A stretch of 64,000 nucleotides of DNA from IMGVR_UViG_3300048008_000449:124001-188000, one strand, 5' to 3'; shown: positions 101 to 57,446, counted from the first letter of the stretch. Notes: a model not told the origin generated them from the letters alone. A program made the numbers and translations.

Positions 101-481
101 TTAATCCCAATGCATCACGTTATGCTTTTGATGCTCGTATGTTTCTTTTAATTGTGTCATTACAGGAATAGAAAATCTAAAACTAAATCTATTAAAATTT
201 ACGGCTGCAAAGCTAGCAGGCTCACATTCAGGTCTTGGTCCTGATTTACTGTGATACCACCAAATCTTTCCATCGCCCTTCATTTCTAAACCTTGTATTC
301 CTTCACCTTTATCCCAATTTTCTAAAATATATTCAAAATCTTTTTGAAGTATTTCTCTCGCAATAACAACATAGTCTGTTACTTTAAAAGAGATCTTAAC
401 TCTACCTAAATCTTTAAATAAGTAAATTTTAATTGGATCTGAAAATAAAACTACTTCGTCTCTATCCTTTATTGTAGGCAT
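101..481 (-). CDS. hypothetical protein
   Basis: 126-aa ORF, GGAG RBS upstream, tightly packed on the coding strand. Confidence 0.7.
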   Translation of the reverse strand: MPTIKDRDEVVLFSDPIKIYLFKDLGRVKISFKVTDYVVIAREILQKDFEYILENWDKGEGIQGLEMKGDGKIWWYHSKSGPRPECEPASFAAVNFNRFSFRFSIPVMTQLKETYEHQKHNVMHWD

Positions 482-1211
482 CAGTTATCTCCTTTGCTAG
501 TTCTTTATTTATTTCTTGATGATTTTGAAAATCTTCATAGTATTGATGTATCCAATTTTGATCTGGACTATCAATTCCCACTGTATCCCATAATGTATTA
601 AGTCCATCTAATGTAGACCATTGACTTTGATTTAATGTAATATCACCTTCATCATCGTTAATTTCATTATTAAATTGTTTTTTAGCATTAAAATTAGAAA
701 CAATAGTTTCTGTTGATTGCCAAGCATGATCGTCTTTGCTGTAGTTTGCATTACGTTCATCTTCCATTAAGTAATTATACTCACGTGCTGCCCAACTAAC
801 AATGTTACCATCCCATTCGTCAATTCTTGTTCTAATCATTATTACTGGTATTCCTCTACTCCATTTCCAAATATCTTTATAATTTTGTGCATGTAGTAAT
901 ACGGCAATACTTTTTGTTTCAATTAAGTTTAATAATCCGTCTAATTGATCATTTGAAATATTCATAGTATTTCTAACGTTATAATTATACCATTGATTAT
1001 CAACATCTGATATATTCCAATAGTCATCATGTACACGTATTTTACCTAGCTCGCCTGGTTCATGGTCAATTTCTTTTCCATCTAGTTCGTAACTTGCCCA
1101 GTGTTCTCCTGCTTGGCTTTCTCCGTGTAACATAGGACTATTATTAAGCAAATATGGAACTTCCATTTGACTTATGCAACTATGACTGCATACTAAGTAT
1201 AGTGTATTCAT
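462..1211 (-). CDS. hypothetical protein, possibly degenerate sulfotransferase-like P-loop fold
   Basis: 249-aa ORF; N-terminal beta-loop-helix YLVCSHSCISQMEVPYLLNNSP. Confidence 0.6.
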   Translation of the reverse strand: MNTLYLVCSHSCISQMEVPYLLNNSPMLHGESQAGEHWASYELDGKEIDHEPGELGKIRVHDDYWNISDVDNQWYNYNVRNTMNISNDQLDGLLNLIETKSIAVLLHAQNYKDIWKWSRGIPVIMIRTRIDEWDGNIVSWAAREYNYLMEDERNANYSKDDHAWQSTETIVSNFNAKKQFNNEINDDEGDITLNQSQWSTLDGLNTLWDTVGIDSPDQNWIHQYYEDFQNHQEINKELAKEITDAYNKG

Positions 1212-1466
1212 TTAATCCTCTAAGTTTTTTCTTTTTTCTCGAATTGCTTCTTGCAAATCAAGTATTTGTTCATTTTCTATTAATCTAATAATTGTTTCAT
1301 TAACGCCTATTTCATGTTGTATCATTCCTAATTTAACCATTAACTTATCAATTTCCTTTGTGTAATAATCAAGTTCTTTTTGTTTACGAGCTCTTCTGTC
1401 GTAAATGTCTGATATATCAATTATTAACTTTGGTTTCTTATTACTGTTATGTCCTATTAAGCTCAT
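1212..1466 (-). CDS. hypothetical coiled-coil protein
   Basis: 84-aa ORF with GAGGTG RBS. Confidence 0.7.
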   Translation of the reverse strand: MSLIGHNSNKKPKLIIDISDIYDRRARKQKELDYYTKEIDKLMVKLGMIQHEIGVNETIIRLIENEQILDLQEAIREKRKNLED

Positions 1467-1489
1467 CTGTCACCTCTTCTAATAAAACA

Positions 1490-1570
1490 CAGGGTTAGCT
1501 GTCCGCTGGCACTGTCCTACGGTGTTGACATGCAAGCAATGAATCTCTGCCGGGCCATGTTTGCTACCTG
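1490..1570 (-). ncRNA. candidate structured RNA (multi-stem junction), family unknown
   Basis: GC-rich intergenic island; nested pairings CAGG/CCUG, UAGC/GCUA, UGGC/GCCA, GCAG(A)G/CUUGC, UGUC/GACA. Confidence 0.45.
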
Positions 1571-1576
1571 CTAGTA

Positions 1577-2284
1577 CTATTTACCAGTAAAAATACTGTA
1601 CCCAATTTTGTATTCAATACCTTGAGCATTAAAGTTTACTGCACTATGTAATTTACCCATATCAAATGTAATTGCATCGCCAGGTTGCCAACGTACAATT
1701 GATTCTACTGTAAGTCCGTGTAGAGCTTCGTATGGTACATGTGTTAGATATTCATCGTATATTTGTTTATTAAATGGAATATCTGTGAATCCTTCTATCT
1801 TAGAATAATCAGTTAAACTTTTATTATAAAAACTTTCAGGTACTTTTGGATATCCTCTAAAACACTTAATAGGGCCATCTAAATAATATTGATCAAATAC
1901 AACAAAATTAGTTGGCTTTGATATTTCTAAAGGAATAACTACTGTCTTAAAGATATCATATATCTTTTCGTGATAATCATCGTTATGAACTATGTGAGGT
2001 CTTTCTACTCTAAATATATTACTACCCCAAACCATATTGTCGCCAATTAAATTATCTACAAAATTTTGTACAGGAGTAAACCATGATTCATATTTCTGTC
2101 TGTCTGGGCTATAGTTCATTACTACAGGACCTTTTGATCCTATATCTTTGTATTTTACAATTTGCTCAGAGTTGTGATACTGATTAAGTAAGTAATCGAT
2201 AAATCCTTGATTAACTACACCTTTGTGTAATTTTGCTGTTTCGTATCTATCAGTAATAACTTTCTTTTGTTCAGCAGTTCTCAT
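1577..2284 (-). CDS. 2OG-Fe(II) oxygenase-like protein
   Basis: HxD (PHIVHNDD) and distal His (KLHSA) with DSBH-like spacing. Confidence 0.6.
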   Translation of the reverse strand: MRTAEQKKVITDRYETAKLHKGVVNQGFIDYLLNQYHNSEQIVKYKDIGSKGPVVMNYSPDRQKYESWFTPVQNFVDNLIGDNMVWGSNIFRVERPHIVHNDDYHEKIYDIFKTVVIPLEISKPTNFVVFDQYYLDGPIKCFRGYPKVPESFYNKSLTDYSKIEGFTDIPFNKQIYDEYLTHVPYEALHGLTVESIVRWQPGDAITFDMGKLHSAVNFNAQGIEYKIGYSIFTGK

Positions 2285-3060
2285 CCAACAAATGCTCTTT
2301 CTATTACAAATTCACCAGGTGTCTTGCTATCGCCTTCGTTAAATCCTATTCCCTCTAAATAATCTTTTAGTTCTAAATTCATTTCCATTGATCCACATAT
2401 CATAACTCTATCGTGTTCTGCATCAATTGGTGGTAACAATAATTTATCTTGTACTTTACCTTCATACATTGCTGTTGTTACTCTGCCTTCATTTTCATAA
2501 GGCTCACGTGTACATGTAAAATATGTTCTAAGTTTTCCTTCAGTAACTTCGCCAAAAATCTCATCAGTATTTAGGCTTTCAATAAGCTCTCTAAAAGGTA
2601 ATTCTTTTGCTGTTCTTGCACCCCATACTACAATTACCCTACTGTAATGTTCATACGTGTCTACGCCTCTTATAATGCTCATAAACGGTGCAATTCCGGT
2701 ACCTGTAGCTATTAGGTATAAGTTACGTCCAGGCTTTAAATTTGTGTGTACTAAGGTGCCTACTGCTTTACTATTCACTATTATTTCGTCACCTTCTTTT
2801 ACATGTTGTAATTTACTTGTTAATGGACCATCTTGTACTTTGATACTATAAAATTCCAATGTTTCTTGATGATTAGGACTTGCTACACTGTATGCCCTCA
2901 TTATAGGTTTATTCTTTTGTAATTTTTCTGACCAATTATCTAATCCAATCATTAAAAATTCACCGTCTCTAAAACGTGTACCTGGATCACGTGTTATTTC
3001 AAAATGCATTAATTGATCTGTATAGTGTGTTACGTTAAGTACTTTTTCTTTATTTGCCAT
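2281..3060 (-). CDS. fpr: ferredoxin--NADP+ reductase
   Basis: RAYSVAS FAD motif, GPLTSKL, ATGTGIAPF, MICGS, C-terminal GEFVIERAF. Confidence 0.95.
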   Translation of the reverse strand: MANKEKVLNVTHYTDQLMHFEITRDPGTRFRDGEFLMIGLDNWSEKLQKNKPIMRAYSVASPNHQETLEFYSIKVQDGPLTSKLQHVKEGDEIIVNSKAVGTLVHTNLKPGRNLYLIATGTGIAPFMSIIRGVDTYEHYSRVIVVWGARTAKELPFRELIESLNTDEIFGEVTEGKLRTYFTCTREPYENEGRVTTAMYEGKVQDKLLLPPIDAEHDRVMICGSMEMNLELKDYLEGIGFNEGDSKTPGEFVIERAFVG

Positions 3061-3061
3061 A

Positions 3062-3832
3062 TTATATCTTGTATACTAATTGAGTATATTCCTTAATTAC
3101 TTCTTTCCAATTTGCCAGTGGTTCTCCACCGATCTTTTTTAATAATAATGCATATTCGTCTTCATCAACATCAAATAATAATTTACCTGCGTCAATAACA
3201 TGTACGTCTAGCATTGTTTTTAATTCATCCATTTTTTCTCGCTGACCTTCTAATTGATCAATTAAGAATTTTTTATTCATTTCTACGCCAGTATCTTGGA
3301 ATGTTTCTGGTTCTCCGTTTTTATCTTTGTATGGTCTTAATCTTCTTGCTCTTTCTAAAAATATATCAAAATGTTCTGCACTAGATACATCAGGAAGATA
3401 TAAACATTTAGGTTGAACTGTTTCTAGCAATTGTTGAATTGCTCCTTCTTTCCAACCTTCTTTAACATTGTGTAATAAATTTGGCTTGCAACATATTTTA
3501 GTAAACGTTGCTGAGTTACGTTCATGTGGATGATTGGCTGCAGTAATTGCAGAAAATATAACATGTTCTTTCCATGACATTTTATCTTGATTATCATGTG
3601 TTGTATTTCTAGATGTACCAACTGCACCTTTCCATAAGTTGTGTCTTTCAACTGCAAGGTGTAATGTTTCGTCTGCTTTTTGCCCCCAAAACTTATCAAT
3701 ACGTTTATCAATTCCATAACAGTCTGCAGTTAAAAATTCATCATGTAAAGATATAAAATATAAAAAGAAGTTACCACTTAAACAAGCTGTATGCATTAGT
3801 AAGTGGCATTCAATATCTTCTGCTTTATTCAT
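3062..3832 (-). CDS. hypothetical protein, paralog of 3825..4517 (sulfotransferase-like fold?)
   Basis: Shared IECH..HT...GN.FL....LH N-terminus and KLLF..D..EY......G.EPL..WK C-terminus. Confidence 0.7.
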   Translation of the reverse strand: MNKAEDIECHLLMHTACLSGNFFLYFISLHDEFLTADCYGIDKRIDKFWGQKADETLHLAVERHNLWKGAVGTSRNTTHDNQDKMSWKEHVIFSAITAANHPHERNSATFTKICCKPNLLHNVKEGWKEGAIQQLLETVQPKCLYLPDVSSAEHFDIFLERARRLRPYKDKNGEPETFQDTGVEMNKKFLIDQLEGQREKMDELKTMLDVHVIDAGKLLFDVDEDEYALLLKKIGGEPLANWKEVIKEYTQLVYKI

Positions 3833-4517
3833 TTATAGTTTCCTTTGCGTACATTAATTTCTTTTTCCATTTATGTAAAGGTTCAGTACCTAAATGTTTT
3901 ATAACGTTTTCATACTCTTGCTGATCATATTTAAAAAGTAATTTATCAACATCAACTTCAACTACAGTATGGTTTTCTTTAATGATATTAATTGCTCTAT
4001 CACTTTTGTTTTTTTGTTCTATAGTGTTTCTATAAATTTCTTCGTATTGACTTTCGTCTACTGTATTCAATAACATTAATCGTCTTGTTATCTTATTATA
4101 AAATTCTGTATTTTCTAAAGGAGTGGATAAATGATATATTACATTAGTACTTATGATGTCCATATGACCTAAACTAACAAATCTTTGTGGTGAATGTATT
4201 TCTGGCTTTACTAGCAATTTAGTAAATTCTGTTTTATCTCGCCATTTAGTATTTGTTTGTTCTTGTAACACATTATTAACATGTGTTTCCCAAGACATAT
4301 CTTTAATAAACCATCTATGATAATCATCAGGTCTAAAATGAAAAAAGTCTCCTTGACCTTTATCGTTATATTCACCATCTTCTGTAATTTTCTTTACTGT
4401 GAATCGAGGACGCAAAGGCGCCATTGCAAAATCTTTATGTAGATTAAACAACCATAAAAATGTATTTCCGTAAAATCCTTGTGTATGTAAACATACGTGA
4501 CATTCAATTTGTTTCAT
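3825..4517 (-). CDS. hypothetical protein, paralog of 3062..3832
   Basis: Same motifs as above plus shared MSWE/KxHV block. Confidence 0.7.
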   Translation of the reverse strand: MKQIECHVCLHTQGFYGNTFLWLFNLHKDFAMAPLRPRFTVKKITEDGEYNDKGQGDFFHFRPDDYHRWFIKDMSWETHVNNVLQEQTNTKWRDKTEFTKLLVKPEIHSPQRFVSLGHMDIISTNVIYHLSTPLENTEFYNKITRRLMLLNTVDESQYEEIYRNTIEQKNKSDRAINIIKENHTVVEVDVDKLLFKYDQQEYENVIKHLGTEPLHKWKKKLMYAKETINE

Positions 4518-4778: not shown

Positions 4779-4853
4779 TGGTAGTCCCTAGGAGAATCGA
4801 ACTCCTCTTTTCAGGATGAAAACCTGATGTCCTAACCGATAGACGAAGGGACC
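4779..4853 (-). tRNA. tRNA-Glu (UUC)
   Basis: GGTCCCT...AGGGACT-A-CCA cloverleaf; anticodon arm TCAGG-TTTTCAT-CCTGA; GTTCGATTC T-loop. Confidence 0.95.
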
Positions 4854-4855
4854 AT

Positions 4856-4932
<77 letters not shown>

Positions 4933-4944
4933 TTATTAGTTAGT

Positions 4945-4973
4945 ATTATAAGTTATCTTAGTATATTTGTCAA
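4945..4973 (-). promoter_or_regulatory. consensus sigma70 promoter for tRNA-Asp/Glu
   Basis: TTGACA-N17-TATAAT, ending 12 nt before tRNA-Asp. Confidence 0.9.
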
Positions 4974-5404
4974 CACCAAGATTCTTTTTTATCACCATAG
5001 TATTCTCTGGCAAATCCATTATCAATTAGCATGTGTCTAAGACTTTTGCCATCAATAATAATATCGCCTAATACTCTGCCACCAAACTTATCCCATTTAG
5101 CAATTGCTACTTGTAGCGTTGTAGATGCGTTAAGTTTATCTTTAGTGAATTGAGATGCTTTCTCACCCCATGCGGCTTCTCTTTCGCACTCAGCTCTCCA
5201 ACCTTTTTCAGGTGTATCAACACCATAAACACGAATGCTTAGTTCTTGTTTAAGTGGTGCTGGTAAAAAGTCTGCTCTAAATGCTACAGTATCACCATCA
5301 ATAACTCTTGTGATTTCGAAGTCATATACTTCCATTGCAATGTCTTTTGCAAAAGCCGGAAGTGTAATAACTGCACAAAATAATATTGTTATTAATTTTT
5401 TCAT
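4970..5404 (-). CDS. SNase/thermonuclease-family nuclease with signal peptide
   Basis: RVIDGDT, IRVYGVDTPE, DKFGGRVLG, LIDNGFAREY; MKK-hydrophobic-AFA signal peptide. Confidence 0.9.
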   Translation of the reverse strand: MKKLITILFCAVITLPAFAKDIAMEVYDFEITRVIDGDTVAFRADFLPAPLKQELSIRVYGVDTPEKGWRAECEREAAWGEKASQFTKDKLNASTTLQVAIAKWDKFGGRVLGDIIIDGKSLRHMLIDNGFAREYYGDKKESWC

Positions 5405-5438
5405 AATATTCTCCTATACAGTTATTTATATAATTAAT

Positions 5439-5858
5439 CTATCTATGATGTTTTAATTCATAATAGTTGCCAGTTTCATCATTAGGATTTTTACCTTGAT
5501 AATCTCTAACCGCAGCTTTAATTGCATCTTCTGCTAACACACTACAATGAATCTTAACTGGTGGCAACGCTAGTTCTTCAACTATCGTTGTATTTTTTAT
5601 TTCACCAGCTTCAATTAAATTCATACCTTTTAACATAGTTGTTACCATACTTGAACTAGCAATTGCACTACCGCAACCATATGTTTTAAATTTTGCATCT
5701 TCTATGATACCATCTGTTACTTTAATTTGTAACCGCATTACGTCACCACAAGCCGGAGCTCCTACCATACCTGTTCCTACGTCTGCGGCATTGGCATCCA
5801 TTTTACCTACATTTCGTGGGTTATTGTAGTGGTCTAACACTTTTTCTGAATATGCCAT
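5439..5858 (-). CDS. iscU: Fe-S cluster scaffold IscU
   Basis: YSEKVLDHY.NPRNVG, GAPACGDVM, GCGSAIASSS, LPPVKIHCS. Confidence 0.97.
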   Translation of the reverse strand: MAYSEKVLDHYNNPRNVGKMDANAADVGTGMVGAPACGDVMRLQIKVTDGIIEDAKFKTYGCGSAIASSSMVTTMLKGMNLIEAGEIKNTTIVEELALPPVKIHCSVLAEDAIKAAVRDYQGKNPNDETGNYYELKHHR

Positions 5859-5870
5859 AAGCCTATTCTC

Positions 5871-6755
5871 CTATAAATATTTTATAAATTGTGTATTGTA
5901 TAAACCTTTTTTACGTTTATACATTTTTACATAATCAAGTAAAAACTTTTTCAATCTAAACGAACTCATTATATCTAGATATTCTGTAATAACAATAGGG
6001 CTTGTATACCAATCGTCACCTACTACTATATGATCTACTTCATTATTTGCATACGAGAATTGCGTATCCTGCGAATATGCTTCTGTCAGTTCTTGACGTT
6101 TTTGTACAAATAGTCTTTCATGATCTTCTGGTTCTCCTAAAACAACTGAGGTGTCGTATTTGTTTAGATTGTCTGCTAAATCATGATGGGCAAAATTTAA
6201 CTGCCACATGTATTTTAGTTTACCATCTTCCCATGCTTTAAGATATTCATTGTGATACTTTCCAAACCATTCTTCTTTCCAACCTTCAATGTGACTATGT
6301 TCTTTAGCCCATGATTCTGATTGCTCAGTAACATCATCTGCTGTTTCAATCCATGCAAACGCATAGTTTGTAATATAGAAAAATAGTTGTTCTTCTATTG
6401 TATTGTCAACTAAGATTGTTTTATCTGCTTTAATAATATTATCTGGGTTAGCTAAGTTTCCACTATAGTTACTCCAAATAGCTGTATCAAAGTCTTTTAC
6501 CACATCTTCAAGTTTTGAAAATGGATCAACAGTTCCATGTTCAGTTTTATCTAACTCTTTAAAAGAATCATTAAACTGTGCATGTAACGGATGATTTCCA
6601 TCTTCAATAACTATTCCACCGATGTGATTATGTTGAGGTCGAAGATATCCATCTGTAAACGAATATACTTCTGGCCCAATATTCATTTCTTGTGAAAGCC
6701 ACCAATGTATTCCTGATGCACTTCCTAAATTGTTTTGATATATTGCTAGTTTCAT
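5871..6755 (-). CDS. hypothetical protein
   Basis: Start reassigned to MKLAIYQ because the upstream extension overlaps tRNA-Ala; AGGA RBS. Confidence 0.7.
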   Translation of the reverse strand: MKLAIYQNNLGSASGIHWWLSQEMNIGPEVYSFTDGYLRPQHNHIGGIVIEDGNHPLHAQFNDSFKELDKTEHGTVDPFSKLEDVVKDFDTAIWSNYSGNLANPDNIIKADKTILVDNTIEEQLFFYITNYAFAWIETADDVTEQSESWAKEHSHIEGWKEEWFGKYHNEYLKAWEDGKLKYMWQLNFAHHDLADNLNKYDTSVVLGEPEDHERLFVQKRQELTEAYSQDTQFSYANNEVDHIVVGDDWYTSPIVITEYLDIMSSFRLKKFLLDYVKMYKRKKGLYNTQFIKYL

Positions 6756-6768
6756 TAATTGTCCTATT

Positions 6769-6844
6769 TGGTGGAGGTAACCGGGATCGAACCGATGACC
6801 TATTGCTTGCAAAGCAATCGCTCTCCCAACTGAGCTATACCCCC
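6769..6844 (-). tRNA. tRNA-Ala (UGC)
   Basis: GGGGGTA/TACCTCC acceptor with G3:U70, anticodon loop TT-TGC-AA, CCA. Confidence 0.95.
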
Positions 6845-6851
6845 TTAATTT

Positions 6852-7058
6852 TTACTCTTCAAAGTATTTATTCAATACTTCTAGATGATCATCATATTTT
6901 GCAATCAAACCCAATTGTTCTTCAATTGCTTCAATAATATCTGGATGTTCGCCTATACCTACTGATTGATTTAAGTATACATGAACATTAGCTTTATGTT
7001 TTGCAATTTGTCCTTCGGCATGAGCTTTTAGTGCTCCTAATAAATGTTCTCTCATCAT
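6852..7058 (-). CDS. small hypothetical phage protein
   Basis: 68-aa helical ORF (VGIGEHPDI), AAGGA RBS. Confidence 0.75.
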   Translation of the reverse strand: MMREHLLGALKAHAEGQIAKHKANVHVYLNQSVGIGEHPDIIEAIEEQLGLIAKYDDHLEVLNKYFEE

Positions 7059-7145
7059 ACTTCCTTTCGTTGTACTCTTCTTTTGTATTTCCTAATATAT
7101 GGCAATATTTCAGCCCGGCAGTCCTGTTGCCGTCTCCTTTTGTGT

Positions 7146-7230
7146 TGGTGCCCTCGGAGAGACTCGAACTCTCACGTCTTGCGACACAGGTTCCTAAGAC
7201 CTGCGTGTCTACCAATTCCACCACAAGGGC
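7146..7230 (-). tRNA. tRNA-Leu (UAG)
   Basis: 85 nt with long variable arm, anticodon loop CT-TAG-GA, CCA. Confidence 0.95.
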
Positions 7231-7235
7231 CTTAG

Positions 7236-7311
<76 letters not shown>

Positions 7312-7931: not shown

Positions 7932-9452
7932 TTATGGGGTTTGTTGGAATTGTGATGGTACTAGTTGTACCCATGTTGTTCCATTCCAACCTTCAAACAT
8001 AGCTGTATCTGTATTGAAAAAGAATTGTCCTGGTACTGGACTAGTTGGTCTTTGTGCAGCAGTACCATTTTCCGCAATAGCTGGTGTTCCTGGTATTCCT
8101 GCTGGTCCTGCTGGTCCTTGTGGGCCAGTTGGTCCTTGTGGGCCTGCTACTGTACTATCTGCACCGTCTTGACCATTGATACCATTGATACCATTAGTAC
8201 CATTTGTTCCGTTAGCACCGGCTGGTCCTGCTGGTCCTTGTGGTCCTGTTGGTCCAGTTGGGCCTGTTGGTCCAGTTGAACCTGTTCCTGTTCCTGAATT
8301 ACCAGTAACTACTTCTTCATTTAAATTTGTAGTAGATGCAGGAGAAGGTGTAACTTTTGTTCCAGTTTCAGCTAATCCAGTCATACCTGGTTGTTGTTGT
8401 GCAATTCTAGGACTTCCAGAACTAGATTCTTGTACGGTTTGCGTACTACGTTCAGTGTAACCTATAACTCTATTACAATGATCGTATATTGGTTCTCTTT
8501 CAGACAATGGCACTGTTGGATCGCCATCGTTTTCTAATCTATTTAACATTTCAGGTTCAAGTAGATAATGGAATATATTATTTCCATCTTCGTCTACTTC
8601 ATAACCTTTTAAACTATTATAAACTGATTGTAAATTACTTGCATACTGTTGACTTTTTGCAAGTGTCATGTTATCTGTATCTATTGCAACACCAACACCT
8701 GTATTAATTCTTTCTTGAGGTGCAAATAAACTACCACCTTGTCCACCTGATTCTGTTCCTGCAAAATTATTTTCAAACTCAATTAAGTTTCCAATATCAT
8801 TTTTAAATGCATTCAAATCACTTATAATATTGTTTTTAACTGCTTCTGGTAAATTTGCTAGGTTGTTAAATTGTGATCCTAGTTTTTGTAATAGTCCACC
8901 TGTAAATAAGTTTGGGTTAAACTTACCATCTGTACCAATACATCCGCCAATATCGCTATCTGCCATTTGACCCAATGTATCAAGTATATCTTTACCTGCA
9001 CCTGTGAAACTTCCCATTGCATCTCTTAATACGTTTGGAATAGCACGTGGAACAACTGGTGTACCACAGAAGTTAATCATATTAGCAATAGCCGCAAATT
9101 CTGCTATAGCCGCATTTAATCTTCCTAGTGCGTTATCAATGTTAGTGTGTGCGATAAAGTCGTCTAATGCATTTTCTGCTTCTTGTAATGCATCTCTTAA
9201 ATCTTCTAAGCCTGCAGGTATCTCAGGTATTAGTCTACCTATGTTAACCTTTAAGCATATTTGTAAATTTGGGAGTTTTATGCCGTTTCCGGCCAATATA
9301 CTACAAATGATTTCTTTCAAGCTGTACGCTTGTGTTTGAGCTGTTATACTACCATTATTTAGGTCTATATCAGCACCAGTAGGAATATCAACAGTTGTTC
9401 TATTGATATAATCACTAGCGTCTTTCAAGCCATTTACAAAATCATTTGCCAT
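7932..9452 (-). CDS. virion/baseplate-associated protein with collagen-like segment
   Basis: Gly-X-Y run (GPT/GPQ/GPA/GTN/GIN); C-terminal GTAAQRP..P..G.FFFNT...FEGWNG..W fibre module; follows the PAAR gene. Confidence 0.7.
   Translation of the reverse strand: MANDFVNGLKDASDYINRTTVDIPTGADIDLNNGSITAQTQAYSLKEIICSILAGNGIKLPNLQICLKVNIGRLIPEIPAGLEDLRDALQEAENALDDFIAHTNIDNALGRLNAAIAEFAAIANMINFCGTPVVPRAIPNVLRDAMGSFTGAGKDILDTLGQMADSDIGGCIGTDGKFNPNLFTGGLLQKLGSQFNNLANLPEAVKNNIISDLNAFKNDIGNLIEFENNFAGTESGGQGGSLFAPQERINTGVGVAIDTDNMTLAKSQQYASNLQSVYNSLKGYEVDEDGNNIFHYLLEPEMLNRLENDGDPTVPLSEREPIYDHCNRVIGYTERSTQTVQESSSGSPRIAQQQPGMTGLAETGTKVTPSPASTTNLNEEVVTGNSGTGTGSTGPTGPTGPTGPQGPAGPAGANGTNGTNGINGINGQDGADSTVAGPQGPTGPQGPAGPAGIPGTPAIAENGTAAQRPTSPVPGQFFFNTDTAMFEGWNGTTWVQLVPSQFQQTP
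8083..8290 (-). repeat. collagen-coding 9-bp periodic repeats
   Basis: gctggtcctgctggtccttgtgg occurs at 8101 and 8221; accattgat tandem. Confidence 0.85.
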
Positions 9453-19430: not shown

Positions 19431-19504
19431 ATTTTGCTCTCGCAATCTTTAGCAGCGTCTTATAGAGCTGATTTAATTATATACATTCGTTGTACATATA
19501 CTAT

Positions 19505-19960
19505 TTATATGTTTTGGCGATAGTTAAAGTACGTGTTTTTACTTGCTGTACTTGTATCTACTATCTCAGGATTAATATTTGCTGTTTCATCTAATATTGT
19601 ATGAACTGGCATTTTATCAAAATCCTGTACTAACATATGAATACTGTTTTCTTCATATTTCCATGCATCTGCTGTTTCACTAGCAAACTTTAATACCCAA
19701 ACATCCTGTACTCCAGAAAAGTTTGAACCAAAATCATAGTCATCTAAATTCTGTGCGTCTAAAAACTCAACTGAACTTAATACTGGTTGAGAACGTAAAC
19801 TTATACTTTGAATGAAAGTATTTAAATTTTGTGCTTGATAGTATCCTTTTGCATCTACTTTAGGACTAACAACACCTGAATCTGTGATATCTATTAATGT
19901 ATAAACTGTATAGAAGTCAGTCGACCCTGTTAAAACCTCATTCGGTCTACTTACACCCAT
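19505..19960 (-). CDS. hypothetical protein
   Basis: 151-aa ORF. Confidence 0.7.
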   Translation of the reverse strand: MGVSRPNEVLTGSTDFYTVYTLIDITDSGVVSPKVDAKGYYQAQNLNTFIQSISLRSQPVLSSVEFLDAQNLDDYDFGSNFSGVQDVWVLKFASETADAWKYEENSIHMLVQDFDKMPVHTILDETANINPEIVDTSTASKNTYFNYRQNI

Positions 19961-48527: not shown

Positions 48528-49954
48528 TTAAATAACTTTCCTATATTCCACGGTGCAATTTTATCCCACTCTGGCATTCTATCAATGTGATGTTGTATCC
48601 AATTATATCCACCAGCTTCTGTAGCTGGACAAGTTGAGTACACTAACATATCGTTATCACTGTTATAATTATATTTATATATAGCATGTAATAATTCTCT
48701 ATGGATTTTATATCTTTCTTCTAATGTATACCATTTAGCTGTAACTTCATAATGAAATATATTACTTAGGTGTACATAGGTTGATCCTTGTCTCTGTGGT
48801 CGACATTTTATTGCAAATTTATCATGCTTATGTGTATTAAGCAAATTCTGATGATAATAATTTATGTTTAGTTTTGGAAATACTGTGCGATACCATTCTA
48901 GAAATCCTTCTTTATATATTTCATCTAGATGTTCTTCTGTATATTTTATTTGCTTAATACCTTTGAAGTATTCAAATTTACTATCATACTTTCCTACTCT
49001 ACTATCCATAAAGTTATTTGCAAACTGCGTAAAGTTAGTTCCATCCCATTCTTCAATTATCTGTTGCATACACCCTAGTGCATGTCTACTTACATCATAT
49101 ATCCATAATGTATCACCTTCTACTAATCCTTTGTCAAATGCAAAGAATATAGGAGATATTCCAGATGCTGGAGCAACTACTTTAGTAAATTTCTTAACTG
49201 GTGTGTCTTTTGGTGGTACAACATTTCTTCCATTTTCTGTATTAGCTATAAAGAAAATGTTTGGATTTGAAATTGTTAATGTTTCATGTATATTTCTAAA
49301 ACCGTCTTGCTTAACTTCACCATATGTATAACCTTTTGATGACCTTACATCTTCATTCCATGATATTATTTTGTGATTATCTCTTAGAAGGTGTTCTATT
49401 ATATTCCACCCGCCTTGTTTTCCTGTATATGTTCTTAAATTATTACCAGGTCCTATCCAATATGGTGTATATCCATCATGATGATTGTTTTCACTACGTA
49501 TTGGTTCTGGAAGTTGATATGGTTCAACATTATCTTCATGATTACCCCACTCTGGCTTACCTGCTGACTGCCACCATTCTAAGTCAATTAAAAAACATTG
49601 TGGATGTATTGAATAATAATCATCTCCTTTATCTAATACATGTCCAATAAGTTTAGCATCTATATTTTCTTCGTAAAATTTAGGAAATCTTTCTTCAAAG
49701 TCGTGTAATATAACACCCTGTTTAAATACAACCATCTTTTTAAAACCATTGCTAAGTGCTTTTTCAAATAAATCTACAATTTTTTCTTCTGCATATTGTT
49801 TATTACAAAAGAATGATAATTCTATAGACCAAAAGTCAAGTGTTGCTTTTGAAAAATGCGTTAAATAGTCAGACTTTATATTATTATTGTAAAGCCAACC
49901 TATACATAATTCATTGCTTTCAGTTTTTTGTCTCCACCAATCTTTTTTAAACAT
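48503..49954 (-). CDS. two-domain hypothetical protein with putative SAM-binding Rossmann C-domain; paralog of 49947..51413
   Basis: VVAPASG, IYDVS, HLSNIFHY; N-domain GHVLDKGDDYYSIHPQ. Confidence 0.65.
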   Translation of the reverse strand: MFKKDWWRQKTESNELCIGWLYNNNIKSDYLTHFSKATLDFWSIELSFFCNKQYAEEKIVDLFEKALSNGFKKMVVFKQGVILHDFEERFPKFYEENIDAKLIGHVLDKGDDYYSIHPQCFLIDLEWWQSAGKPEWGNHEDNVEPYQLPEPIRSENNHHDGYTPYWIGPGNNLRTYTGKQGGWNIIEHLLRDNHKIISWNEDVRSSKGYTYGEVKQDGFRNIHETLTISNPNIFFIANTENGRNVVPPKDTPVKKFTKVVAPASGISPIFFAFDKGLVEGDTLWIYDVSRHALGCMQQIIEEWDGTNFTQFANNFMDSRVGKYDSKFEYFKGIKQIKYTEEHLDEIYKEGFLEWYRTVFPKLNINYYHQNLLNTHKHDKFAIKCRPQRQGSTYVHLSNIFHYEVTAKWYTLEERYKIHRELLHAIYKYNYNSDNDMLVYSTCPATEAGGYNWIQHHIDRMPEWDKIAPWNIGKLFKWNKTKKK

Positions 49955-57389: not shown

Positions 57390-57415
57390 AGTTGTTCCTT
57401 ATATGTATTATTTAT

Positions 57416-57446
57416 AATAACGCAGGCGTATTTTACCTGCGTTATT
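57416..57446 (-). terminator. inverted repeat between sbmA and halogenase, abutting a late promoter TATAAATA (57409-57416)
   Basis: AATAACGCAGG-N9-CCTGCGTTATT. Confidence 0.7.

What the first reader, a model, noticed from the sequence alone, without database searches (positions are those of the whole stretch)
1490..1570. GC-rich intergenic element that folds into a multi-stem RNA
Seen: a 110-nt gap between otherwise abutting genes, much more GC-rich than its flanks. The minus strand reads CAGG-UAGC-aaaca-UGGC-ccg-GCAGAG-auucauug-CUUGC-a-UGUC-aacaccguag-GACA-gu-GCCA-gcggaca-GCUA-ac-CCUG. This gives nested helices closing a three-way junction, with a possible CCGU/GCGG pseudoknot. It ends about 15 nt before the GAGGUG RBS of 1212..1466. 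I could not match it to a riboswitch, ribozyme or tRNA I know. Inference: an unannotated cis-regulatory RNA, processing site or small RNA.
Basis: partly seen in the sequence, partly recalled or inferred. Interest (0 to 1): 0.6.

Follow-up and report, generated by a model that had tools for sequence, protein, structure and literature searches.

The report
Conserved phage late-mRNA leader RNA
The GC-rich gap holds a real, previously uncatalogued structured RNA, conserved in uncultured marine jumbo T4-like phages, that sits at the predicted 5' end of a late transcript and most likely controls a small operon encoding a coiled-coil protein and a sulfotransferase-like enzyme.

Summary
Window 1490-1570 (minus strand) lies in a 110-nt gap and has 55.6% GC against 27-31% in the flanking genes. 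Its own folding energy is no better than that of shuffled sequences (z = +1.66).

About 33 distinct relatives from marine phage contigs share one architecture: a variable closing helix P1, then UGGC, CC, a variable hairpin P3, then A-GG-ACA, GCCA, GCGGAC and the return strand P1'. In a 25-sequence structural alignment 93.5% of cells pair, against 70.6% in shuffles and 28-50% when partners are slid. Thirteen of 20 pairs show compensatory changes.

No Rfam 15 family, tRNA or terminator scan matches it. It occurs once per genome. It always lies between a T4-late-type promoter box (NNTAAATA) and the next ribosome-binding site. P1 starts about 5-7 nt after the box, at the expected transcription start. 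It travels with an 84-aa helical protein gene and a 249-aa sulfotransferase-like gene.

Best reading: a new cis-acting, riboswitch-like leader RNA. Its ligand and output are unknown.

The parts
1578..1585 (-). T4-late-promoter-like box GGTAAATA; family consensus NNTAAATA, often TATAAATA or AATAAATA. It overlaps the stop codon of the upstream gene.
   Evidence: All 32 variants analysed carry TAAATA just upstream of P1. P1 starts 4-8 nt after it in 22 of 32. In the phage's own genome TAAATA lies within 60 nt upstream of 52 of 265 genes, against 4% of random windows. Function as a promoter is inferred.
1563..1570 (-). P1 5' arm (CAGGUAGC)
   Evidence: Pairs with 1490-1499. All 8 modelled P1 pairs show compensatory changes. 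Self duplex -13.8 against cross-partner -6.6 kcal/mol.
1558..1562 (-). J1/2 junction (AAACA), A/U-rich and of variable length in the family
   Evidence: Alignment A11
1554..1557 (-). P2 5' strand UGGC (invariant in the main type)
   Evidence: Pairs with GCCA 1507-1510. Relatives show GC to GU changes and UGAC/GUCA in L343.
1552..1553 (-). CC, the proposed P2a partner of GG 1516-1517
   Evidence: CG in 19 sequences and UG in 6 at the second pair, with no double change. The pairing is plausible but not proven.
1520..1551 (-). P3 variable hairpin. The base pairs are G1551-C1521 and G1550-C1522. The window subtype carries a conserved insert (1524-1547) whose internal fold is unresolved.
   Evidence: 5 of 6 modelled P3 pairs are compensatory across the family. 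The insert is shared by the window/L003, L040/L049, L305 and L335 and is unique in the genome.
1513..1518 (-). Conserved 3'-strand bulge A-GG-ACA (A, G, G, A invariant and C in 23 of 25)
   Evidence: Column counts of A11
1507..1510 (-). P2 3' strand GCCA
1500..1506 (-). Conserved junction GCGGACA (GGA invariant in the main type)
   Evidence: It is replaced by UAGGAAU (L025 type) or AAAWGUAC (L319/L328) in divergent subtypes.
1490..1499 (-). P1 3' arm (GCUAACCCUG), followed by UGUUUUAUU
1464..1476 (-). Shine-Dalgarno GAGGUG (1476-1471) and ATG (1466-1464) of the 84-aa gene, 13 nt downstream of P1'
1212..1466 (-). First downstream gene: an 84-aa conserved protein predicted as one long helix (likely coiled coil); function unknown
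   Evidence: 96 homologues, all unnamed. AlphaFold model with helix 19-83 and pLDDT 85.7.
462..1211 (-). Second downstream gene: a 249-aa protein with a sulfotransferase-like P-loop fold (a lead, not proven). This is the gene that most faithfully accompanies the element.
   Evidence: The ESM Atlas neighbours are named sulfotransferase. The Foldseek top hit is Stf0 at E = 0.011. The best VIA-align hits are tyrosylprotein and heparan N-sulfotransferases at Z 7.7-8.3 over residues 1-249. Co-occurrence is shown.

Best explanation
The element is a conserved, about 65-80-nt structured RNA that forms the extreme 5' end of a transcript started at a T4-type late promoter box. The transcript serves a small operon: an 84-aa coiled-coil protein (sometimes absent) and a 249-aa sulfotransferase-like protein. 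The phages are uncultured marine jumbo myoviruses distantly related to PA5oct and Rak2-like phages.

The fold is one long irregular hairpin. A closing helix P1 starts at about +1. It is followed by a 4-bp helix P2 (UGGC/GCCA), a probable 2-bp CC/GG step, and a variable distal hairpin P3. Two invariant purine-rich bulges (A-GG-ACA and N-GGA-C) lie on the 3' strand.

Most likely it is a cis-acting leader. The conserved bulges would form a specific binding pocket for a trans factor, either a small molecule (riboswitch-like) or a phage or host protein. The state of P1 would then set the fate of the mRNA, through 5'-end protection and, where a U-tract follows P1', read-through versus termination.

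Shown: the sequence family, the covarying helices, the strand, single copy per genome, position relative to the promoter box and RBS, and the gene association. Inferred: the transcription start, the cis-regulatory role, the existence and nature of a ligand, and the output mechanism.
For: Homologues in the same gap occur in IMG/VR and metagenome contigs.

Model R2 finds 26 of 26 true sites and nothing else in 131 kb. It finds 28 sites, all in the same place and orientation, in 179 kb.

Covariation: 93.5% of cells pair, against 70.6% in shuffles (0 of 500 reach it) and 28-50% when partners are slid. Thirteen of 20 pairs have double changes, 8 of 8 in P1 and 5 of 6 in P3. The top mutual-information pairs are the helix pairs. 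P1 arms pair with their own partner at -13.8 kcal/mol, against -6.6 with foreign partners.

53 of 459 cells are G-U, so the structure exists only on the minus (sense) strand.

There is one copy per genome.

NNTAAATA lies upstream in 32 of 32 variants despite at least 5 different upstream genes. P1 begins 4-8 nt after it in 22 of 32, the T4-type +1 position. The box is enriched upstream of this genome's genes, and exact TATAAATA is depleted elsewhere.

In one metatranscriptome, a contig with 0 mismatches at depth 20 covers 120..1594, while the upstream gene sits at depth 0-2.8.

The element stays with the 249-aa gene in 28 of 31 element-bearing loci, two of the three exceptions being loci cut short. 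That count includes loci that lack the 84-aa gene. By contrast, 7 of 9 element-less 84-aa loci lack the 249-aa gene.
Against: No ligand is known, and no conserved expression platform was found. The SD is not consistently sequestered: its unpaired probability ranges from 0.13 to 0.97 in a rough scan. P1 sequences show no systematic complementarity to the SD.

The simple scan calls no terminator in the window. The U-tract after P1' is present in only about half of the variants.

The window's own promoter box (GGTAAATA) departs from this genome's commonest NATAAATA context.

A second metatranscriptome contig (X15, 294..1737) runs through the element from the upstream gene. Contigs cannot show RNA ends.

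The family was not found in 185,579 prokaryote species by a strict pattern. That is unusual for a metabolite riboswitch.

The single-sequence fold is not significant.

Alignment A11 was fitted to the model, which inflates pair counts somewhat.
Confidence: 0.55

Rival explanations
1. It is specifically a metabolite-sensing riboswitch. The conserved bulges form an aptamer, P1 is stabilised by the ligand, and the output is termination at the P1'-U-tract or altered 5'-end decay. The ligand would possibly be tied to the sulfotransferase-like gene, for example PAPS, PAP or APS. This is a sub-case of the best explanation, scored separately.
For: The anatomy is classic for an aptamer: covarying P1 and P3 of variable length, invariant unpaired nucleotides, and an optional insert in the distal hairpin. 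It sits in a 5' leader and is tightly associated with one enzyme gene. Subtypes have altered core nucleotides (L025, L319/L328, L343). Textbook stem-plus-U-run shapes follow P1' in L319, L328 and L314.
Against: There is no bacterial counterpart and no Rfam relative. There is no consistent expression platform. AU-rich P1 helices in the L006-L009 group would make poor terminators. The ligand idea rests only on a weak fold assignment.
Confidence: 0.25
2. It is a protein-binding operator. A phage-encoded protein, or a host RNA-binding protein of the CsrA type that reads GGA motifs, docks on the two GGA bulges and represses or activates the late operon, as T4 does with the gene 32, RegA and gp43 operators.
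For: The distribution is phage-only. Two invariant (A/C)GGA(C/A) motifs lie about 12 nt apart on one strand, with an SD as a possible third site. T4-like phages are known for translational operators (established knowledge). The adjacent 84-aa protein is basic and helical.
Against: The element persists where the 84-aa gene is absent (L012, L040, L049), and half of the 84-aa genes lack the element. So simple autoregulation by that protein is unlikely. The GGA motifs lie in bulges, not in the hairpin loops typical of CsrA sites. No candidate protein was identified.
Confidence: 0.2
3. It is a passive 5'-terminal stabiliser and insulator. Its only role would be to base-pair the 5' end of the late mRNA, protecting it from RNase E or RppH-type decay, and perhaps to stop read-through from upstream genes.
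For: P1 starts at the predicted +1 with 0-3 unpaired nucleotides. That is the known requirement for 5' stem-loop stabilisers such as the ompA leader (established knowledge). A U-rich tail follows P1' in about half of the variants.
Against: A stabiliser needs no invariant internal bulges, no fixed P2, and no conserved order of elements across sequences whose P1 and P3 have completely diverged. Related phages manage with a 10-nt unstructured leader (L306).
Confidence: 0.12
4. It is an independent small RNA of about 70-85 nt, with both ends in P1. It would be made from the late promoter and ended at P1' by termination or processing, and would act in trans, for example as a decoy or sponge or against a host defence. 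The downstream mRNA would be mere read-through.
For: Both ends are paired, as in stable small RNAs. It is single-copy, has promoter-like and terminator-like flanks in several variants, and is far more GC-rich than its surroundings.
Against: There is no room for another promoter between P1' and the next SD (9-42 nt), so the operon must be read through it. The element moves with the downstream genes, not on its own. A metatranscriptome contig is continuous from the element into the genes. No terminator is called in the window.
Confidence: 0.1
5. It is a self-cleaving ribozyme or an RNase processing site.
Against: There is no match to any Rfam ribozyme model even at E <= 10 in 16 variants. The helix order is not that of hammerhead, twister, pistol, hatchet or HDV-like folds (comparison from memory). 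A promoter box directly upstream already explains the 5' end.
Confidence: 0.03

Closest known systems
Orphan riboswitch candidates of marine phages and metagenomes (manA, wcaG, glnA/Downstream-peptide and PhotoRC motifs; Weinberg et al. 2010, PMC2864571)
   Same: Short structured RNAs found by covariation. They sit in 5' leaders of phage auxiliary genes in marine T4-like phages, have conserved internal loops, and have no proven ligand (except glnA).
   Different: None of these Rfam models matches, even at E <= 10. The helix order and conserved letters differ. This family is confined to a PA5oct/Rak2-related jumbo-phage lineage and to one locus.
T4 translational operators (gene 32 leader pseudoknot; RegA and gp43 operators), from established knowledge
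   Same: Cis-acting RNA elements in leaders of T4-type phage mRNAs, recognised by a trans factor.
   Different: Those overlap or abut the RBS and are bound by known phage proteins. Here the SD is outside the element and no binding protein is known.
5'-terminal stabilising stem-loops (E. coli ompA leader type), from established knowledge
   Same: A helix that begins within a few nucleotides of the 5' end of the mRNA.
   Different: Stabilisers need no conserved bulges. This element keeps invariant unpaired nucleotides over wholly diverged helices.
T4-type late promoter TATAAATA (NATAAATA in marine T4-like phages), from established knowledge
   Same: The same 8-bp box, at the right distance (about 5-nt spacer) from the first nucleotide of P1. 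It is enriched upstream of genes in this genome.
   Different: The window's own copy reads GGTAAATA. No gp55-type sigma factor was sought in the genome, and no start site was mapped.
CsrA/RsmA-binding leaders and sponge RNAs (GGA motifs), from established knowledge
   Same: Two invariant GGA motifs spaced about 12 nt apart, upstream of an SD.
   Different: The GGA motifs lie in helix bulges rather than hairpin loops. The host is unknown, and the rest of the fold is far more constrained than CsrA sites are.

Membership tests
Any Rfam 15 family (4227 covariance models, including all riboswitch and ribozyme classes) | Score at or above the family's gathering threshold, or at least a recurrent weak hit at the element | tested here: not met
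   The window at gathering thresholds yields only 5 tRNAs. Window 1400-1650 at E <= 10 gives 0 hits. Fifteen loci holding variants, at E <= 10, give no hit on any element.
tRNA / tmRNA | Cloverleaf recognised by ARAGORN or RF00005 | tested here: not met
   ARAGORN finds 5 tRNAs at 4779-7311 and none at 1467-1576. Rfam agrees.
Intrinsic terminator | GC-rich stem with a short loop, followed by a T-run | tested here: not met
   No terminator-like site in window 1100-2400. P1 plus a U-run resembles one only in some relatives (L319, L328, L314).
Riboswitch (generic) | Conserved aptamer: covarying helices around invariant unpaired nucleotides | tested here: met
Riboswitch (generic) | Location in the 5' leader of the regulated gene, with a consistent gene association | tested here: met
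   It always lies between the promoter box and the next RBS. It is associated with the 249-aa gene in 28 of 31 element-bearing loci. The transcription start itself is inferred.
Riboswitch (generic) | Expression platform (alternative pairing that hides the SD or forms a terminator) | tested here: inconclusive
   No consistent SD sequestration (a rough scan). A U-tract follows P1' in about half of the variants. No terminator is called in the window.
Riboswitch (generic) | Direct, selective ligand binding | not testable with these tools
   Needs in-line probing or ITC.
T4-type late transcription unit | TATAAATA-type box about 6 nt upstream of the RNA start | tested here: inconclusive
   The box is present in 32 of 32 variants and correctly spaced to P1 and is enriched upstream of genes. 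However, the window's copy is GGTAAATA, RNA ends are not mapped, and contigs give only a depth step near 1594.
Small self-cleaving ribozymes (hammerhead, twister, twister-sister, pistol, hatchet, HDV-like) | Match to the family model or its conserved core | tested here: not met
   No Rfam hit at E <= 10. Cleavage itself is not testable here.

The most novel reading that the evidence does not exclude
A new riboswitch class that exists only in phages. It would be an aptamer at the very 5' end of a late mRNA of marine jumbo phages. It would sense a small molecule linked to the co-transcribed sulfotransferase-like enzyme (for example PAPS or PAP) or to the state of the infected cell, with P1 doubling as a 5'-end shield and attenuator. 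The subtypes (L025, L319/L328, L343) would represent changed specificity.
Probability: 0.2. Interest if true: 0.8.

Novelty: new member of a known kind. Interest (0 to 1): 0.55.

Why it matters
Structured leader RNAs with invariant pockets are the raw material from which new riboswitch classes and new phage regulatory circuits have been found.

This one is well defined: about 33 variants, a working covariance model, clear helices and clear invariant nucleotides. It is absent from Rfam. It belongs to abundant but uncultured marine jumbo phages, whose gene regulation is essentially unknown.

It also gives a concrete handle on late transcription in this lineage, because the promoter box is placed exactly one spacer upstream of P1. 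And it gives a handle on an unexplored phage sulfotransferase-like gene.

If it binds a metabolite, it would be a rare phage-restricted riboswitch. If it binds a protein, it would be a new operator-repressor pair. It is small enough (60-80 nt) for direct biochemical testing without a cultured host.

Tried and rejected
1. Single-sequence folding of both strands gave z = +1.66 and +1.23, which is not informative.
2. blastn of the locus and tblastn of the 84-aa protein against 50,697 phage records found no match. Only TerL finds isolates.
3. Pfam and PHROGs gave nothing on the flanking genes except an FAD/NAD oxidoreductase at 2281..3060.
5. A strict pattern in 185,579 prokaryote genomes gave 110 hits. 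The 17 hits in regions under 50% GC were inspected by eye and look like chance (coding-like, no P1 or P3). The other 93, in GC-rich DNA, were counted but not examined one by one.
6. MAFFT and RNAalifold alone recover only P2, because P1 and P3 vary in length. This was solved with a single-sequence CM (R1) followed by R2.
I switched to coordinates and character-class patterns.
8. I looked for tertiary or pseudoknot pairs by mutual information and by J1/2 against J2a/2 complementarity. Nothing was consistent (and inspection).
9. I tested the idea that the 84-aa protein autoregulates through the element. It is weakened by loci with the element but no 84-aa gene, and by the reverse case. The model of this protein is a single helix, so no fold search was run.
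10. A resemblance of the window's P1' and bulge letters to CRISPR I-F or I-E repeats was dismissed, because those letters lie in the variable P1 arm.
11. An automated leader and SD accessibility scan parsed P1 badly in several loci, so it is treated as rough only.
12. The PA5oct omics paper (PMC7318152) reports sigma70-like promoters and four ncRNAs, but nothing comparable to this element.

Full report
WHAT IS THERE. The window is bases 124001-188000 of a 204,772-bp IMG/VR virus record, estimated 56% complete. It has about 34% GC and nearly all its genes are on the minus strand. It encodes a T4-type large terminase, tail sheath, gp15-like sheath stabiliser, class I ribonucleotide reductase, DnaB-like helicase and five tRNAs. 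The nearest isolates by TerL are the jumbo phages PA5oct (55.6% identity) and the Rak2/GAP32 group.

The finding lies in the 110-nt gap 1467..1576. Upstream is ORF 1577..2284 (235 aa; no Pfam or PHROG hit; a DUF6445-like lead). Downstream is ORF 1212..1466 (84 aa). The element at 1490-1570 has 55.6% GC, against 27-31% in the flanks. Only 0.55% of 81-nt windows in the window are as GC-rich.

IS IT MORE THAN CHANCE? Not by its own folding energy. The MFE is -21.7 kcal/mol against a shuffle mean of -27.0, giving z = +1.66. The plus strand is no better. No tRNA or Rfam family matches, even at E <= 10.

The comparative evidence is decisive. I fetched relatives of the flanking proteins from IMG/VR and from metagenomes, and ran a DNA pattern scan. 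These gave about 33 distinct variants of one motif in the same place.

The shared architecture, 5' to 3' on the sense strand, is:
- P1, with free sequence and 5-19 bp.
- A short A/U-rich junction.
- UGGC, then CC(C/U).
- P3, a hairpin of free sequence and length.
- N-U-A-GG-A-C-N-A-NN, then GYYA, then (G/U)(C/A)GGA(C/A)N, then P1'.

A covariance model seeded from one sequence (R1) and rebuilt from 17 hits (R2) behaves cleanly. It finds 26 true sites and nothing else in 131 kb at E <= 1. It finds 28 sites in 179 kb of loci collected through the 84-aa protein, all just upstream of that gene and on its strand. Nine further loci carry divergent subtypes recognised by eye (L309/311/312/313/317, L319, L328, L343, L374). 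In total, about 37 of 79 loci hold an element.

STRUCTURE. On the 25 distinct rows of alignment A11, 93.5% of cells form standard pairs. The figure is 70.6 +/- 1.4% when 3' letters are shuffled (0 of 500 shuffles reach it) and 28-50% when partners are slid by 1-3 columns. Thirteen of 20 pairs show changes on both sides. The covariation score is 0.581 against 0.213.

Support differs by helix:
- P1: 8 of 8 pairs are compensatory.
- P3: 5 of 6 pairs are compensatory.
- P2 (UGGC/GCCA): only GC to GU changes within this set. The divergent L343 has UGAC/GUCA.
- CC/GG step: only C to U changes, which keep a wobble pair.

The highest mutual-information column pairs are exactly the helix pairs, and no tertiary pair stands out.

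Independently of the fitted alignment, each 5' flank pairs with its own 3' flank at -13.8 kcal/mol on average, against -6.6 +/- 3.2 with the flanks of unrelated variants. Constrained MFE folds of all 32 variants give the same P1-P2-P3 layout.

Fifty-three of the 459 cells are G-U. These would be A-C mismatches on the other strand, so the fold belongs to the minus-strand RNA.

P1 and UGGC/GCCA are right. The rest is not supported across the family:
- The fourth helix (UGUC/GACA), and therefore the three-way junction, uses the invariant GGACA bulge. Most members have no UGUC. It is possible only in the window's own subtype (window/L003, L040/L049, L305, L335). That subtype carries a conserved 24-nt insert in P3, whose internal fold four sequences cannot resolve.
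- The CCGU/GCGG pseudoknot loses its middle pair in most relatives.

CONTEXT. The element is single-copy in its genome and in three other large contigs.

Every one of 32 variants has NNTAAATA a few nucleotides upstream. Ten read TATAAATA, the T4 late-promoter consensus (a familiar fact, not tested here). This holds although the upstream gene differs in at least five ways, and although the box sometimes overlaps a stop codon in three different reading contexts. P1 starts 4-8 nt after the box in 22 of 32 variants, most often at 5 nt. In the rest, MFE merely extends P1 into AU-rich sequence. That is where a T4-type late transcript would start.

In this genome, TAAATA lies within 60 nt upstream of 52 of 265 crude gene calls, against 4% of random windows, mostly as NATAAATA and 15-30 nt from the start codon. 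Exact TATAAATA is depleted, with 5 in the window against 13.9 expected. The window's own box, GGTAAATA (1585-1578), is a weaker match.

Metatranscriptome contigs give only soft support. In run X16, a contig identical to the window at depth 20 spans 120..1594, while the upstream gene sits at depth 0-2.8. In run X15, a contig runs from 294 to 1737. Contigs cannot show RNA ends, and DNA may be present in such libraries.

Only 9-42 nt, including the SD, separate P1' from the next start codon. There is no further promoter box in between, so the operon must be transcribed through the element.

GENES SERVED. The 84-aa protein has 96 unnamed marine homologues and is predicted as one long helix, residues 19-83, with pLDDT 85.7.

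The next gene (462..1211, 249 aa) has no Pfam or PHROG hit. Three weak but concordant leads point to a sulfotransferase-like P-loop fold:
- ESM Atlas neighbours named sulfotransferase.
- Foldseek best hit Stf0 at E = 0.011.
- VIA-align best hits tyrosylprotein and heparan N-sulfotransferases, Z 7.7-8.3 over the whole length, with kinases covering only residues 1-214 (the tool itself warns that Z in this range is middling).

A tblastn table of all loci shows how the genes travel with the element. The 249-aa gene follows the element in 28 of 31 element-bearing loci, including L012, L040 and L049, where the 84-aa gene is missing. Two of the three exceptions (L315, L314) are loci cut short. L020 has lost the gene. 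Conversely, 7 of 9 lineages in which the 84-aa gene has no element also lack the 249-aa gene. L306/L021 have both genes behind a bare promoter box and a 10-nt leader. The element therefore behaves as an optional module of the leader of this operon.

HOW IT LIKELY WORKS. The firm points are these. It is an RNA-level element on the sense strand. Its helices are free to change, but two 3'-strand bulges and P2 are fixed. Its first nucleotide coincides with the predicted +1. It cannot be bypassed by the downstream genes.

That combination fits a cis-acting leader with a specific binding pocket. I put about 0.55 on a cis-regulatory leader overall. Within that, roughly 0.25 goes to a small-molecule riboswitch and 0.2 to a protein operator.

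A purely passive 5' stabiliser or insulator (0.12) explains the position of P1 but not the invariant bulges. An independent small RNA (0.1) fits the paired ends and the U-rich tails. It does not fit the lack of a downstream promoter or the linkage to the operon. A ribozyme or processing site is unlikely (0.03).

I found no conserved SD-sequestering alternative (a rough scan) and no terminator call in the window. Several relatives have a stem-plus-U-run after P1' (L319, L328, L314). The output step therefore remains inferred.

COMPARISON AND NOVELTY. It works like the orphan riboswitch candidates of marine phages (manA, wcaG, glnA/Downstream-peptide; PMC2864571). It also partly resembles T4 translational operators and 5' stabilising hairpins. 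It is a member of none that could be tested: no Rfam model matches any of 16 variants at E <= 10. A strict pattern found no convincing copy in 185,579 prokaryote species, where the low-GC hits inspected look like chance. It is a new family of a known kind of element.

LIMITS:
- Alignment A11 is model-fitted.
- The transcription start, ligand and output are inferred.
- The fold assignment of the 249-aa protein is weak.

Noticed in passing
window 4779-4932 and 6769-7311 (minus strand): Five phage tRNA genes (Glu-TTC, Asp-GTC, Ala-TGC, Leu-TAG, Thr-TGT). Metatranscriptome contigs pile up here at very high depth, with many loose ends, probably from conserved tRNA sequence of other organisms.
   Followed up: no
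whole genome G000; window sites 5423-5430, 19502-19509, 48672-48679, 57409-57416 (minus strand) and 5872-5879 (plus strand): Exact TATAAATA is under-represented, with 5 in the window against 13.9 expected and 11 in 204 kb, 10 of them on the coding strand. The relaxed box NATAAATA sits 15-30 nt upstream of about a fifth of genes. This suggests a T4/cyanophage-like late promoter in a PA5oct-related jumbo phage, whereas PA5oct itself is reported with sigma70-like promoters.
   Followed up: partly
window 462-1211 (minus strand): A 249-aa protein with no Pfam or PHROG hit folds confidently (pLDDT 89) into a sulfotransferase-like P-loop fold. The usual PAPS-binding loop letters are not obvious at the N-terminus (LVCSHSC).
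   Followed up: partly
window 1524-1547 (minus strand); also L040, L049, L305, L335: A 24-nt insert in the distal hairpin is almost invariant across variants whose P1 has fully diverged, and it is unique in the genome. It contains UGUC, which could pair with the invariant GGACA bulge and so act as a built-in competitor. This is untestable with four sequences.
   Followed up: partly
window 1577-4517 (minus strand): A run of five similar-sized genes (230-259 aa) lies upstream of the element. They have no family hits except an FAD/NAD(P)-binding oxidoreductase at 2281..3060. The 235-aa protein is a DUF6445-like lead. This may be an auxiliary modification cluster.
   Followed up: no
L382 (G000:114001-126000), just outside the window: Downstream of the operon lie unnamed genes of 126 aa and 366 aa. 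Further on are an LPD29-domain protein, an ATP-dependent DNA ligase, an HD phosphohydrolase and a ClpP-like prohead protease.
   Followed up: no
window 7932-9452 (minus strand): A 506-aa protein with collagen-like triple-helix repeats, matching tail-fibre PHROGs.
   Followed up: no
L319, L328, L025/L309-L313, L343, L374: Divergent subtypes of the element keep P1, P2 and P3 but replace the GCGGAC junction (by AAAWGUAC, UAGGAAU or CGUAAAU) or change P2 to UGAC/GUCA. Model R2 does not detect them. They may be specificity variants.
   Followed up: partly
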